A stretch of 64,000 nt of DNA, from the NCBI RefSeq assembly GCF_001194135.2, contig NC_068991.1, forward strand, positions 78,206,564 through 78,270,563. Direction: 5' to 3'. This stretch comes from Octopus bimaculoides (taxonomy: Eukaryota). The notes under the pieces are model-generated. The model searched no databases, was not told the DNA's origin, and saw nothing but the letters and a program-made list of their open reading frames with translations. Shown in pieces: positions 43,398 to 47,923 of the stretch. Every line of letters begins with the position of its first letter. Within the stretch, counting starts at the first letter, position 1. The position numbers were made by a program, and so were the translations under genes.

Positions 43398-43571
43398 TGT
43401 TTTCTCTCTTCTCAAAACGATCCATTTGTCCTGCTGCGGTGTTTTTCTTATCTTCAATTCTTTCATTTTTCTTTCTCCTTTTTTGTTCTAATTTGATGTG
43501 ACTTGAAAGAAGCAAGACGCGAGCAAAACCTCTCCGAATGCTGGACTTTCTACTCTCACTGTGAAACTATT
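43398..43571 (+). other. Candidate non-coding 5'UTR exon of vasohibin
   Basis: Ends at GTATCCTTTT (U12 donor consensus). Begins near TCAGT (Inr-like, or a polypyrimidine-CAG acceptor at 43397). Sits at the CpG-decay boundary. Inferred. Confidence 0.45.
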
Positions 43572-45496
43572 GTATCCTTTTAATAAGAGATTCATTCTTC
43601 GTTCTGGTTTCGAATCTCACTTGTTGACGACTTCCCAGACAGTTTTAAATAAGTATTATTTAAAAGAAGAATTTTTATTTTCCTTTTCTTTTTGCGATAA
43701 AATTATAATCGCCTTCGAAATACTGGTCGATATAATTCACTGTCCACTCCCTTAAAAAATCCCCCGGGGGGAAGGGTTTTTTAAAAAATTTAGTTGCTAT
43801 GGAAGAAATCATGTAGAAAACATTTTATGTTCAGGTCAATTTAATTTTAAATAAGAACCTTTCACATATCAGGAAGGGGTTCGATCTTTATCGCCTAGAC
43901 CAGGGGGTCAGTAGAACGGTCAGTATTGACACCTGTGGTGGGTGGGGACCTGTATAGCTATCCAAATGATTTTGAGCATTGAGCGTGCTGAATTATTAAG
44001 GAATTGAATTTGGAAGAACGTCGGTAAATTAAGGTTAAAAACTCACTAATTGCCAACCAAATACCGATACAATAACTAGCTTTCACCAAACACAGATTTC
44101 CCATTAAATATTCCAACTACATCGATATAATATGATTGAATTTTTATTGTTCTTTATCAATTTCGTTAAGTATTTTCCATAAATTTCTTTAAATATTTCT
44201 TATTAAAATATAGTAATAATACAAAAGAAGCAGAGAATTATTGATTTTAAATCTAGAAATTTTTTATTAATTTCGCATTTTAATTTCATTAAAAAATTTA
44301 CCTGAGGGAGTTTGATAAGTTATCGACATACCTATACAGGTGTGCCCACCTCTCACCTGCAATTTTATTTCCTCATAACTTTCAGTGAATATTTATAGTG
44401 ACATTTTCTTCAAATACCTTTCAGAAGGTGTACATTCTGTTTATACTGGAACCTGTTGTGAAAAACTATTTTTCATGGGTAGGGAGAGGAATTTTTGGTA
44501 ATTCACATGAGTTGNNNNNNNNNNNNNNNNNNNNNNNNNNNNNNNNNNNNNNNNNNNNNNNNNNNNNNNNNNNNNNNNNNNNNNNNNNNNNNNNNNNNNN
44601 NNNNNNNNNNNNNNNNNNNNNNNNNNNNNNNNNNNNNNNNNNNNNNNNNNNNNNNNNNNNNNNNNNNNNNNNNNNNNNNNNNNNNNNNNNNNNNNNNNNN
44701 NNNNNNNNNNNNNNNNNNNNNNNNNNNNNNNNNNNNNNNNNNNNNNNNNNNNNNNNNNNNNNNNNNNNNNNNNNNNNNNNNNNNNNNNNNNNNNNNNNNN
44801 NNNNNNNNNNNNNNNNNNNNNNNNNNNNNNNNNNNNNNNNNNNNNNNNNNNNNNNNNNNNNNNNNNNNNNNNNNNNNNNNNNNNNNNNNNNNNNNNNNNN
44901 NNNNNNNNNNNNNNNNNNNNNNNNNNNNNNNNNNNNNNNNNNNNNNNNNNNNNNNNNNNNNNNNNNNNNNNNNNNNNNNNNNNNNNNNNNNNNNNNNNNN
45001 NNNNNNNNNNNNNNNNTCTCTCCGTCTCTCTCTCTCTTCTCTTCACCCTAAGTGCGTAGCTTTTGTGCCTATTCTGTGGTGAGACATGTTACATTCCGTT
45101 TCTTAAAAACATTATCACGAGTTAACAAGGAAGAAAGGGAGAGGAGTTGGAGTTTTTGTTTTGTTTTGTTTATCTTTTTATATATAGATCTTTAATTGTA
45201 AATGTATTTGTGTATGTATATGTATATAATAATATGATACTGAACTAATTGTATACAGTGCTCGGGTGCACTAGAACCAGAGGCGGACTTGCCAGCTTGC
45301 CCGATAGCAAATGGGCCCCTGCGCTATTAGAATCTATATATGGGGACACATGTTAGTATCCAAGGGGCCCATCCCCTCAAGTTTGAGAATTCTTTATTCA
45401 CTCCTGGAAGAATGCATTAATCATTTCAGCCTGGCTGTGTTTGTAGACAGTTGTAAAGAATACTTTTAACACAAAAAAAAAATAAGCGATAGCATT

Positions 45497-45746
45497 GTAG
45501 TTGCGGGTGGGCTTCCTAGTAGTTGCGGGTGGGACCCCTTGTAGTTGCGGATGGGCACCCTAGTAGTTGCGGATGGGCACCCTAGTAGTTGCGGGTGGGA
45601 CCCCTTGTAGTTGCAGGTGGGCCCTCTTGTAGTTGTGGGTGGGTCCTCTAGTAGTTGCGGGTGGGATCCCTTGTAGTTGCGGATGGGCACCCTGGTAGTT
45701 GCAGGTGCGCCCCCTAGTAATTGCAGGTGGGCCCCCTACTAGTTGC
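45497..45746 (+). repeat. 22-bp minisatellite (GTAGTTGCRGRTGGGNNCCCTW), 11 or more units, runs into a gap
   Basis: Units counted by eye. Confidence 0.95.
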
Positions 45747-46395
45747 NNNNNNNNNNNNNNNNNNNNNNNNNNNNNNNNNNNNNNNNNNNNNNNNNNNNNN
45801 NNNNNNNNNNNNNNNNNNNNNNNNNNNNNNNNNNNNNNNNNNNNNNNNNNNNNNNNNNNNNNNNNNNNNNNNNNNNNNNNNNNNNNNNNNNNNNNNNNNN
45901 NNNNNNNNNNNNNNNNNNNNNNNNNNNNNNNNNNNNNNNNNNNNNNNNNNNNNNNNNNNNNNNNNNNNNNNNNNNNNNNNNNNNNNNNNNNNNNNNNNNN
46001 NNNNNNNNNNNNNNNNNNNNNNNNNNNNNNNNNNNNNNNNNNNNNNNNNNNNNNNNNNNNNNNNNNNNNNNNNNNNNNNNNNNNNNNNNNNNNNNNNNNN
46101 NNNNNNNNNNNNNNNNNNNNNNNNNNNNNNNNNNNNNNNNNNNNNNNNNNNNNNNNNNNNNNNNNNNNNNNNNNNNNNNNNNNNNNNNNNNNNNNNNNNN
46201 NNNNNNNNNNNNNNNNNNNNNNNNNNNNNNNNNNNNNNNNNNNNNNNNNNNNNNNNNNNNNNNNNNNNNNNNNNNNNNNNNNNNNNNNNNNNNNNNNNNN
46301 NNNNNNNNNNNNNNNNNNNNNNNNNNNNNNNNNNNNNNNNNNNNNNNNNNNNNNNNNNNNNNNNNNNNNNNNNNNNNNNNNNNNNNNNNNNNNNN

Positions 46396-46463
<68 letters not shown>

Positions 46464-47923
46464 AACCCAGCATGGAGTCAATAGCTAACTAGCATTAGTA
46501 CTTAGTGACACAAATACTTGAGATGGTGAACAAGTGCTTCATAAGACCACTTCGGGAAGTGATGGTCCTGTAGTTCTTGTCACAGCATGTTTTGGAAAGG
46601 GATAGAGGTAGCTCCTTTGATATCTGCCCAGCATTGTAAGTCCAAGAAAACAAAACCTAGCCGAATGCTTCCTCATAGAATAACAAAAGCTGTCAATCAG
46701 CTTCAATTCACTTTCAAGAAGCTGCATTTCCAGCAACCTCCTGCAGGTGGTTGAAATGAGCTAGAAGTCATCTTGGATCACCTTTGCCGCTAGATCTATA
46801 TTTAAGAGTGATTCAGCGAAATGTGGAAATGAACACCCTCACTCCCCACCCCAATCTCACTCTTCTGAATCTTCACATTTGCTTCATTTTTTTTCTCTAT
46901 TTCTGCACTTAAAAAATTGTATTTGTTTAACCCATCAAATTCCCACATCATCTTAGGTTAAACATTCAATTCTAATTTCAGTGACCTAATTTGGCTTTGA
47001 CACAGGTATATTCCCAAGACACCTGTAAAAAAAAAAAACAGCTCCTTCATTCTGTGACTAAGAGACAGTTTACTTCCATCACCTTTTGTCAGCTTCTTTC
47101 TGCCAGCTTCAAACTTCACTGAGACTTAATTTTCACACACACACACACACACACACAAACTTCTTTCTTGTGAGCCTGGAACCCTTTACATTTCCTTTCA
47201 CACATTTAGTGGAAGACTACCAAAAGACATTCCATGTAAACAAACAGTTGTCCACAACACACAAATGTGTGTGCTTTCTTCCAAATCCTTTCTCTCTGAA
47301 TAAATCTGTACAATTCCAGCATCCAAAACAGGCATTACATGATTAAGAAGAGGCAATAATTATAGACTTTGTAACATCAATTTATTTCAGTAATTCAGAA
47401 ATTACTTATTACATCTCACTTGTTACACATATTCTGTAAAGATTCAGAATAACTATATATCTAATACAGTTCTATATTTAAGAGATGAGGAATTATGTAC
47501 ATTATTTACATTATTTACATTTGACAGATATTTGTCATCATTTGTGGTGGTGGTGGTGGTGGTGGTGGTGGTGGTGGTGGGAAGTGGGGTGAGGGTTTTT
47601 CTTCATCATCATCATCATCATCATCGTTTAACGTCCGCTCTCCATGCTAGCATGGGTTGGACGATTTGACTGAGGACTGGTGAACCAGATGGCTAACACG
47701 ATTCATGTACTGGCAGTTTTTTCATATTTTGGAATTTCAATTAAAGGATTATCACTTGTGATAAACTTGCAAACAAATCATAAATCAATGTGTATTTCAA
47801 TGTTTCCTTTTTCTTTTTCATTTTTTTTTTTATATAATGCTAGTTTTTATAATCTTGTCATATAAAAGAAAAACAAGAATTCCTTGATGCTGTACCTAAC
47901 AGATAAGTCGAGCAATTGGCTGA

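What the first reader, a model, noticed from the sequence alone, without database searches (positions are those of the whole stretch)
43398..47923. Candidate third minor intron in the vasohibin 5'UTR, giving U12-U2-U12-U2-U12 alternation
Seen: the ATG exon has an acceptor at 47902 preceded by TTCCTTGAT (47880-47888, matches TTCCTTRAY). All three frames are closed upstream of the ATG. A GTATCCTTTT donor lies at 43572, at the CpG boundary. Known: U12 introns are rare, genes with three are exceptional, and 5'UTR ones are uncommon. Inference: minor-spliceosome gating of tubulin detyrosination from the first intron. Caveat: GTATCCTT also occurs by apparent chance at 58991.
Basis: partly seen in the sequence, partly recalled or inferred. 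Interest (0 to 1): 0.7.

Follow-up and report, generated by a model that had tools for sequence, protein, structure and literature searches.

The report
Possible third minor intron, octopus vasohibin
Upstream of the start codon of the octopus vasohibin gene lie the sequence signals of a rare "minor" (U12-type) intron, which would be a third one in a gene already known to carry two; the signals are plausible, but no RNA evidence could be obtained.

Summary
The window is Octopus bimaculoides and the gene is vasohibin (tubulinyl-Tyr carboxypeptidase). They are the donor GTATCCTTTT at 43572, the branch site TTCCTTGAT at 47880-47888, CAG at 47900-47902 (15 nt after the branch A), and an in-frame TGA directly before the ATG at 47924.

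The two assembly gaps inside the candidate intron are harmless. Gap-free O. sinensis and O. vulgaris are collinear across them and hold no competing minor-intron motifs there.

Support:
- Both motifs are single-copy and kept in both relatives. This is weak evidence, because background identity is 89%.
- The branch-site-plus-AG arrangement within 100 nt of an ATG has a chance probability of about 0.002-0.005.
- CpG depletion typical of a methylated octopus gene body starts 3-3.8 kb upstream of the ATG exon and 0.7-1.6 kb downstream of the donor. This argues that transcription starts far upstream.

Against:
- No RNA evidence could be obtained.
- The intron signals are absent upstream of the ATG in a gastropod, a bivalve, amphioxus and a fish. 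Mouse Vash1 and Vash2 each have two introns in the published table of minor-intron coordinates.
- Weak major-type (U2) donors exist nearby.

The two coding U12 introns are ancient and already catalogued. My probability that the third is real is about 0.55. The "gating" inference is speculation.

The parts
43398..43571 (+). Candidate non-coding first (or upstream) exon. Its 3' end is set by the donor and its 5' end is unknown. It contains an 8-codon uORF (MLDFLLSL).
   Evidence: Single-copy sequence. It lies in the CpG-normal zone just upstream of the CpG change point. It is 93-97% identical to O. sinensis and O. vulgaris, but the local background reaches the same level. uORF.
43572..43581 (+). 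Candidate U12-type 5' splice site, GTATCCTTTT
   Evidence: Identical in O. sinensis (L001 4636) and O. vulgaris (L002 5573). Scores -5.7 with a rough U2 donor matrix, like the two coding U12 donors.
43572..47902 (+). Candidate 5'UTR intron. It is 4331 nt as assembled, of which 1151 are N (gaps 44515-45016 and 45747-46395). The orthologous span is 5344 nt in O. sinensis and 4407 nt in O. vulgaris.
   Evidence: No coding ORF with a family signal, and no other RTATCCT or TCCTTRAY, in the orthologous gap-free sequence.
44300..45017 (.). CpG observed/expected change point (0.89 upstream, 0.29 downstream), taken as the start of the methylated gene-body domain
   Evidence: Change points: window 44300, L001 6201, L002 7001. 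Interpreted with the gene-body methylation patterns reported for O. bimaculoides in PMC9476566.
47862..47869 (+). TATAAAAG, a TATA-box-like octamer. It is the basis of the rival reading that transcription starts at the ATG exon.
   Evidence: Conserved in both relatives. TATAAAAG occurs 3 times in the window, and the looser TATAWAWR about 5 times per kb.
47880..47888 (+). Candidate U12 branch-point sequence TTCCTTGAT, with the branch A at 47887
   Evidence: 9/9 identical in both relatives, while the 11-nt spacer before CAG differs at 4 positions. Human SPEG has the same TCCTTGAT core in its listed minor-intron branch site.
47900..47902 (+). Candidate 3' splice site CAG, 15 nt after the branch A (14 nt in the relatives). 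There is no pyrimidine tract between them.
47903..48136 (+). ATG exon: 21 nt of 5'UTR (47903-47923, ending in an in-frame TGA) and CDS 47924-48136 (71 aa). A U2 donor AAG|GTAAAT follows at 48137.
   Evidence: The protein is identical to XP_014769402.1.
53186..53271 (+). Coding exon 2
53272..54821 (+). Coding U12-type intron (GA|GTATCCTTTG ... TTTTACTTAATTGACTTTAG|A). It is ancient and is catalogued in vertebrate VASH1 and VASH2.
54822..54874 (+). Coding exon 3. Its last 4 nt and the U2 donor are lost in gap 54875-55139.
   Evidence: O. sinensis reads ...TTTGCTT|GTGAGT.
56604..56678 (+). Coding exon 4. It carries LPIKCLEA, which by my recollection holds the catalytic Cys.
56679..59159 (+). Second coding U12-type intron (GT|GTATCCTTCA ... 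TTTCCTGAACGAGACAAAG|T). Ancient.
59160..59331 (+). Coding exon 5, followed by a U2 donor GTAAGA. Later exons lie at 61096-61141, 62731-62810 and 63865-63948, and two more lie beyond the window.

Best explanation
The octopus vasohibin mRNA starts at a non-coding exon about 4.3 kb upstream of the start codon, ending at 43571. That exon is joined to the ATG exon at 47903 by removal of a GT-AG U12-type intron. In this model U11 pairs with GTATCCTTTT at 43572, U12 pairs with TTCCTTGAT at 47880-47888, and the CAG 15 nt after the branch A is the 3' splice site. This would give the gene three minor introns, alternating with major ones over its first five introns. The third would be specific to octopods or cephalopods, in contrast to the two ancient coding ones. 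Shown: the motifs, their spacing, their presence in three Octopus genomes, and the CpG domain boundary. Inferred: that transcription starts upstream of the boundary, that these two sites are spliced to each other, and that the minor spliceosome does the splicing.
For: - The donor is a perfect 10-nt match to the U12 consensus. The branch site fits TTCCTTRAY, the branch-A-to-AG distance is 15 nt, and there is no pyrimidine tract. The two accepted U12 acceptors of the same gene look the same.
- The branch-site-plus-AG arrangement occurs at only about 0.015-0.05 per kb per strand in octopus sequence. Landing within 100 nt of the ATG has p of about 0.002-0.005.
- It is the only RTATCCT between the CpG boundary zone and the ATG in all three species, including the sequence that fills the window's gaps.
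- CpG observed/expected falls from 0.89 to 0.29 at 0.7-1.6 kb downstream of the donor and 3-3.8 kb upstream of the ATG. It then stays low through the whole gene, in all three species.
- In O. bimaculoides, methylation marks gene bodies and spares transcription start sites, intergenic DNA and transposons (PMC9476566). No other coding gene lies in the depleted stretch.
- The motifs are conserved while the spacer between branch site and AG is not: 4 of 11 positions differ. Of three other intragenic RTATCCTT sites, only one is conserved.
- Only weak U2-type donors lie in the readable 1.2 kb upstream of the boundary.
Against: - No transcript or junction evidence of any kind could be obtained.
- Conservation was tested only against two species at 89% background identity, where an 8-9-mer survives by chance about 35-40% of the time.
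- RTATCCTT within 10 kb upstream is expected by chance in roughly a third of cases.
- No matching signals were found upstream of the ATG in Gigantopelta, Dreissena, amphioxus or Scomber. In the MIDB coordinate table, mouse Vash1 and Vash2 each have two minor introns and no further one appeared. The intron would therefore have to be a lineage-specific gain, which established knowledge says is rare in animals, or an undetected ancestral one.
- The prior is low: about 0.3% of introns are U12-type.
- TTGAT also fits the loose U2 branch consensus.
Confidence: 0.55

Rival explanations
1. There is a 5'UTR intron, but it is an ordinary U2-type intron. A distal non-coding exon would be spliced from a degenerate U2 donor, for example TCG|GTAAATTA at 44024, CAG|GTGTGCCC at 44340, or a site hidden in gap 44515-45016. 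It would join the CAG at 47902 or the TAG at 47845, which follows a long T-tract. The two U12-like motifs would then be coincidences.
For: - The CpG boundary argues only for a distal start, not for an intron type.
- The 44024 donor closely resembles the real intron-1 donor AAG|GTAAATTA and lies in a 95-97% conserved stretch.
- TTGAT fits yUnAy, the loose U2 branch consensus.
- A T-rich tract precedes the TAG at 47843-47845.
- More than 99% of introns are U2-type.
Against: - It needs two independent coincidences: p about 0.002-0.005 for the branch site plus AG, and about 0.1-0.3 for a perfect U12 donor in the right zone.
- No strong GTAAGT or GTGAGT donor lies in the readable upstream zone.
- The acceptor at 47902 lacks a pyrimidine tract.
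Confidence: 0.27
2. There is no 5'UTR intron. Transcription starts about 25-35 nt upstream of the ATG from a TATA-type promoter (TATAAAAG at 47862-47869). Both U12-like motifs would be chance matches in promoter or intergenic DNA.
For: - TATAAAAG is a perfect TATA consensus 55 nt before the ATG and is conserved in both relatives.
- The exact octamer occurs only 3 times in the window.
- In Gigantopelta the divergent neighbour ERG28 starts only about 700 nt upstream of the vasohibin ATG, so short 5' ends exist in this gene family.
Against: - The CpG-depleted, gene-body-like domain extends 3-3.8 kb upstream of the ATG exon in all three Octopus genomes, with no other gene there to explain it.
- Loose TATA matches are common in this AT-rich DNA, at about 5 per kb.
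- Conservation is uninformative at 89% background identity.
Confidence: 0.1
3. The acceptor at 47902 is a true U12-type 3' splice site, but it pairs with a donor other than 43572. The partner could lie further upstream than the data held here, or there could be additional small UTR exons in between.
For: - The acceptor is the statistically strong half of the evidence and the donor is the weak half.
- A strong pyrimidine tract plus CAG at 43370-43397 would allow 43398-43571 to be an internal exon with more exons upstream.
Against: - 43572 is the nearest upstream RTATCCTT in all three species.
- The next ones lie in transposon-like sequence (41676) or are not shared between species (L001 3554).
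Confidence: 0.06

Closest known systems
Vertebrate VASH1 and VASH2, catalogued minor-intron-containing genes in MIDB/U12DB (mouse Vash1 and Vash2 show two minor introns each)
   Same: The octopus introns 53272-54821 and 56679-59159 sit at the same codon positions and phases as in other species: before YN(H/Y)TGTQFF and after LPIKCLEAVIL-x-x, both phase 2. They carry the same GTATCC donors as in Scomber VASH1, amphioxus, Dreissena and Gigantopelta. In the coordinate table of the supplement to PMC6717393, mouse Vash1 and Vash2 each have two minor introns; VASH1 and VASH2 also appear in its mouse-human orthologue table.
   Different: No third, 5'UTR minor intron appeared for mouse or human. No U12 signals were found upstream of the ATG in the four non-octopus loci examined.
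GT-AG subclass of U12-type (minor) introns
   Same: 5' splice site /GTATCCTT, branch site TCCTTRAY 10-20 nt from the 3' splice site, no pyrimidine tract, and GT-AG termini (about 72% of minor introns, PMC6717393).
   Different: The location is in a 5'UTR rather than in the coding region. Splicing has not been demonstrated.
Genes with three minor introns (3 of about 700 minor-intron genes in both human and mouse, PMC6717393)
   Same: If real, octopus vasohibin would join this very small class.
   Different: The third intron would be lineage-specific and non-coding. The identity of the three mammalian genes was not checked here.

Membership tests
U12-type (minor) intron, GT-AG subclass | 5' splice site matching /RTATCCTT | tested here: met
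   GTATCCTTTT at 43572-43581. Identical in O. sinensis and O. vulgaris.
U12-type (minor) intron, GT-AG subclass | Branch-point sequence matching TCCTTRAY | tested here: met
   TTCCTTGAT at 47880-47888. It is the only TTCCTTRAY on the + strand of the window.
U12-type (minor) intron, GT-AG subclass | Branch A about 10-20 nt from the 3' splice site, with no pyrimidine tract in between | tested here: met
   15 nt in the window and 14 nt in the relatives. The spacer GCTGTACCTAA is mixed in composition, and the sequence upstream of the branch site is purine-rich.
U12-type (minor) intron, GT-AG subclass | The two sites are actually spliced to each other in RNA (junction 43571^47903) | not testable with these tools
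   No octopus transcript covering the 5'UTR could be retrieved.
U12-type (minor) intron, GT-AG subclass | Removal depends on the minor spliceosome (U11, U12, U4atac, U6atac) | not testable with these tools
   This needs an experiment.
U12-type (minor) intron, GT-AG subclass | Signals conserved in orthologues beyond neutral expectation | tested here: inconclusive
   The signals are kept in two Octopus species, but background identity is 89%. One of three control RTATCCTT sites is also kept. The signals are absent in Gigantopelta, Dreissena, amphioxus and Scomber.
Vasohibin (PF14822) gene with two ancestral U12 introns | Encodes a vasohibin-domain protein | tested here: met
   The exons translate to XP_014769402.1. 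The hits carry PF14822, and the best relatives are Octopus tubulinyl-Tyr carboxypeptidase 1-like proteins.
Vasohibin (PF14822) gene with two ancestral U12 introns | U12-type introns at the two conserved phase-2 positions | tested here: met
   MIDB supplement listing.

The most novel reading that the evidence does not exclude
The 5'UTR intron is real and is a de novo gain of a U12-type intron in the octopod (or cephalopod) lineage, in a gene that already had two ancient ones. It would be a datable, rare example of minor-intron birth in an animal. It would also produce a strict U12/U2 alternation over the first five introns. That arrangement favours U12-to-U12 exon skipping, as already seen in the annotated isoform that joins the donor at 53272 to the acceptor at 59159.
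Probability: 0.3. Interest if true: 0.6.

Novelty: new member of a known kind. Interest (0 to 1): 0.4.

Why it matters
Minor introns are ancient and slowly lost, and gains in animals are considered very rare. A verified lineage-specific U12 intron in a 5'UTR would be a useful case for how such introns arise. It would place octopus vasohibin among the handful of genes with three minor introns (3 of about 700 in human and in mouse). Functionally it would add little. The enzyme that detyrosinates tubulin already depends on the minor spliceosome through two coding U12 introns conserved from molluscs to mammals. The practical value is mainly for annotation: where the gene starts, and that U12-aware tools are needed for this locus.

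Tried and rejected
Searches for RNA evidence that gave nothing:
- A homology search with the N-terminal 100 aa, meant to pull transcript fragments, found 3 candidates and none scored.
- An exact look-up of the 78-aa read-through ORF from the ATG exon is not on record.
- An exhaustive HMMER search with exon 1 returned only the O. sinensis representative for Octopus.
- The two cephalopod-like Logan transcripts have 21 nt and about 125 nt of unalignable 5'UTR and no genome to map them to.

Other dead ends:
- The newer O. bimaculoides assembly has the same gaps.
- Two mammalian VASH1 proteins were not on record for locus retrieval.
- Text searches for VASH together with minor-intron terms found no paper text. 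Only a supplement listed the genes.

Ideas rejected:
- Conservation of a block before the donor as evidence for an exon. Equally conserved blocks occur in the intron.
- A CpG island promoter. The stretch corresponding to gap 42852-43304 in O. sinensis is microsatellite and AT-rich sequence, and the GC-rich block at 41000-42650 looks like a transposon.
- ATATCCTT at 41676 as the donor, because it lies inside that transposon-like block.
- ERG28 as a divergent neighbour that would fix the promoter. It was not found within 47 kb upstream.
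Full report
IDENTITY OF THE LOCUS

The window is 100% identical to Octopus bimaculoides chromosome CM046611.1 (L003; window position = L003 position + 37923), which carries the same assembly gaps. The gene on the + strand from 47924 onward encodes vasohibin (tubulinyl-Tyr carboxypeptidase, PF14822). Its exons translate exactly to XP_014769402.1 (P0121, 322 aa). The closest relatives are the O. vulgaris and O. sinensis proteins at 95% identity.

Coding exons in the window are 47924-48136, 53186-53271, 54822-54874 (running 4 nt into gap 54875-55139), 56604-56678, 59160-59331, 61096-61141, 62731-62810 and 63865-63948. 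Two more exons lie beyond the window.

THE OBSERVATION

- GTATCCTTTT at 43572-43581.
- TTCCTTGAT at 47880-47888.
- CAG at 47900-47902.
- ATG at 47924, preceded by an in-frame TGA at 47921-47923.

The branch A at 47887 is 15 nt from the last intron base. The 11-nt spacer is not pyrimidine-rich and the sequence upstream of the branch site is purine-rich. The site therefore looks like the two accepted U12 acceptors of this gene (TTTTACTTAATTGACTTTAG|A and TTTCCTGAACGAGACAAAG|T). It does not look like the gene's U2 acceptors, which have clear pyrimidine tracts.

THE GAPS

Two gaps (44515-45016 and 45747-46395) lie inside the candidate intron, and a third (42852-43304) lies just upstream of the candidate exon.
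- O. sinensis (L001) and O. vulgaris (L002) are gap-free there and collinear with every readable block of the window, in the same order and orientation.
- The stretches that correspond to the two internal gaps (about 600 and about 840 nt in L001) are microsatellites and non-coding sequence. They contain no RTATCCT and no TCCTTRAY.
- The stretch that corresponds to the upstream gap is (CT)n, (CA)n and AT-rich sequence.
- The gaps therefore do not hide a competing minor-intron signal, as judged by orthology. Reading frame is irrelevant in this non-coding stretch.

HOW MUCH IS CHANCE

- Dinucleotide-preserving shuffles predict 4.7 RTATCCTT per window on both strands. Nine are seen, eight of them on the + strand. 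A donor-like octamer within 10 kb upstream is expected in roughly one case in three, so the donor alone proves nothing.
- TCCTTRAY is at its chance level overall: 8 seen against 9.5 expected.
- The full arrangement, TCCTTRAY with an AG 9-21 nt after the branch A, occurs only about 0.015-0.05 times per kb per strand in 207 kb of octopus strand sequence. The chance that it lands in the last 100 nt before the start codon is therefore about 0.002-0.005.
- Against a prior of roughly 0.1-0.3% for a U12-type 5'UTR intron, this leaves roughly even odds before other evidence is considered.

CONSERVATION

Both motifs are intact in O. sinensis and O. vulgaris (donor at L001 4636 and L002 5573; branch site at 9958 in both; AG ending at 9979). 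The spacer between branch site and AG differs at 4 of 11 positions, including a 1-nt deletion. The 21-nt UTR part of the ATG exon is 20/21 identical. That pattern is what a functional branch site with a free spacer would give.

The comparison is shallow, though. Background identity is 89%, and blocks of 95-97% identity occur inside the candidate intron as well. As an empirical control, one of three other intragenic RTATCCTT sites (58991) is also conserved, while 53416 and 58516 are not. I take conservation as a likelihood ratio of about 3 and no more.

THE CpG BOUNDARY

This is the most useful new result.
- CpG observed/expected is 0.7-1.1 over the 44 kb upstream. It drops to 0.1-0.45 from about 44.3 kb onward and stays there through the whole gene.
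- A likelihood change-point analysis places the switch at window 44300 (0.89 to 0.29), L001 6201 (0.95 to 0.19) and L002 7001 (0.90 to 0.30).
- In O. sinensis the switch is 1.6 kb downstream of the donor and 3.8 kb upstream of the ATG.
- In the window it abuts gap 44515-45016. The O. sinensis equivalent of that gap is still CpG-normal, so the true switch is probably at about 45.0 kb.
- Bisulfite data for O. bimaculoides show that methylation is concentrated on the bodies of a subset of genes and is low on intergenic DNA and transposons. A large class of genes is methylated through the body but not at the transcription start site and promoter (PMC9476566).
- No other coding gene lies in the depleted stretch upstream of the ATG.

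The inference, not a demonstration, is that the vasohibin transcription unit begins upstream of the switch. That is at least 3 kb before the ATG exon, so a 5'UTR intron exists and its donor should lie in the 1-2 kb before the switch. The only RTATCCT in that zone in all three species is the candidate. U2-type donors in the readable part are weak: TCG|GTAAATTA at 44024 and CAG|GTGTGCCC at 44340 (scored with a rough matrix of my own). This weighs strongly against the rival in which TATAAAAG at 47862-47869 drives transcription from just before the ATG.

CONTEXT: THE TWO CODING U12 INTRONS

Intron 53272-54821 (GA|GTATCCTTTG) and intron 56679-59159 (GT|GTATCCTTCA) are phase-2 introns. They lie at positions shared with Gigantopelta, Dreissena, amphioxus and the fish Scomber VASH1. 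All of these have GTATCC(T/A)T or GTATCTTT donors and TTAAC-type branch sites close to the AG.

The supplement of the MIDB paper lists VASH1 and VASH2 among minor-intron genes. Its coordinate table shows two minor introns each for mouse Vash1 and Vash2, and its mouse-human orthologue table gives splice-site and branch-site sequences for VASH1 and VASH2 (PMC6717393). The same paper reports 50 genes with two minor introns and only 3 genes with three, in both human and mouse.

The intervening introns are U2-type: AAG|GTAAAT at 48137, and GTGAGT in O. sinensis for the donor hidden in gap 54875-55139. Only the first member is new and unproven.

IS THE THIRD INTRON SHARED?

Within 6-10 kb upstream of the annotated ATG, Gigantopelta, Dreissena, amphioxus and Scomber have no RTATCCTT. 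None has a TCCTTAAC-like element (at most one mismatch) within 400 nt of the ATG. In Gigantopelta the divergent neighbour ERG28 starts only about 700 nt upstream. No further minor intron appeared for mouse or human in the supplement. If the octopus intron is real, it is either a lineage-specific gain or an ancestral UTR intron lost or unannotated elsewhere.

WHAT COULD NOT BE DONE

No octopus transcript covering the 5'UTR could be retrieved. The junction 43571^47903 therefore remains untested, and minor-spliceosome dependence cannot be tested in silico.

VERDICT

The sequence meets all motif criteria of a GT-AG U12-type intron, and the CpG domain boundary independently places the start of transcription near the proposed upstream exon.
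- I put the probability that 43572-47902 is a real U12-type intron at about 0.55.
- The rivals are an ordinary U2-type 5'UTR intron at about 0.27, no 5'UTR intron at about 0.10, and a U12 acceptor with another donor at about 0.06.
- The idea that this intron 'gates' tubulin detyrosination is speculation. Any such dependence is already provided by the two ancient coding U12 introns.
- Novelty: a possible new member of a known kind, in a gene family already catalogued as containing minor introns.

Noticed in passing
window 53272 joined to 59160 (skipping 54822-54878 and 56604-56678): The RefSeq isoforms XP_052827975.1 (O. bimaculoides; the only O. bimaculoides protein the look-up tied to the chromosome-level assembly) and XP_036362942.1 (O. 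sinensis X2) join the U12 donor of one coding minor intron to the U12 acceptor of the next. This removes 44 aa, including the LPIKCLEA motif that by my recollection holds the catalytic cysteine. The product is probably inactive, and the event is an example of U12-to-U12 exon skipping.
   Followed up: partly
window 44300-45017 (L001 about 6200, L002 about 7000): There is a sharp, species-conserved switch in CpG observed/expected from about 0.9 to about 0.25. It marks the edge of a depleted domain that covers the whole vasohibin gene and continues into the convergent ANGEL-like neighbour.
   Followed up: yes
window 54875-55139: This assembly gap swallows the last 4 nt of coding exon 3 and its U2 donor. 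O. sinensis reads ...CCTCTTTGCTT|GTGAGT there. The old UniProt model A0A0L8HU07 (85 aa) joins exon 1 to exon 3 out of frame instead.
   Followed up: partly
whole window, + strand: 17145, 41676, 43572, 53272, 53416, 56679, 58516, 58991; - strand: 16858: RTATCCTT shows a strand asymmetry, 8 on the + strand against 1 on the - strand, where 4.7 are expected in total. Two are the real coding U12 donors. Of the other intragenic ones, 58991 is conserved in O. sinensis, while 53416 and 58516 are not.
   Followed up: partly
L005, L007, L008, L001 (neighbours of vasohibin): The microsynteny ERG28 (-), vasohibin (+), Exo_endo_phos ANGEL-like (-) is shared by amphioxus and Gigantopelta. The ANGEL-like neighbour is kept in octopus and Scomber. 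From memory, human VASH1 lies next to ANGEL1 and VASH2 next to ANGEL2. ERG28 was not found in the 47 kb upstream in the octopus window.
   Followed up: partly
window 48196-48580; L001 10300-13950: A G-rich minisatellite with a unit of about 51 nt lies in intron 1. It spans about 0.4 kb in O. bimaculoides and about 3.6 kb in O. sinensis.
   Followed up: no
window 47608-47699 and 56069-56160: A dispersed repeat of about 92 nt (95% identical copies) lies in the candidate 5'UTR intron and in coding intron 3, with further copies in L001 and L003. It is probably a short interspersed element.
   Followed up: no
window 41000-42650 and 2332-2691 (-): These are GC-rich blocks that look like transposons, and their ORFs share peptide similarity (…GPGPMDN(Y/F)QKSL…). 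They account for the GC-rich patch upstream of the gene, which is not a CpG-island promoter.
   Followed up: no
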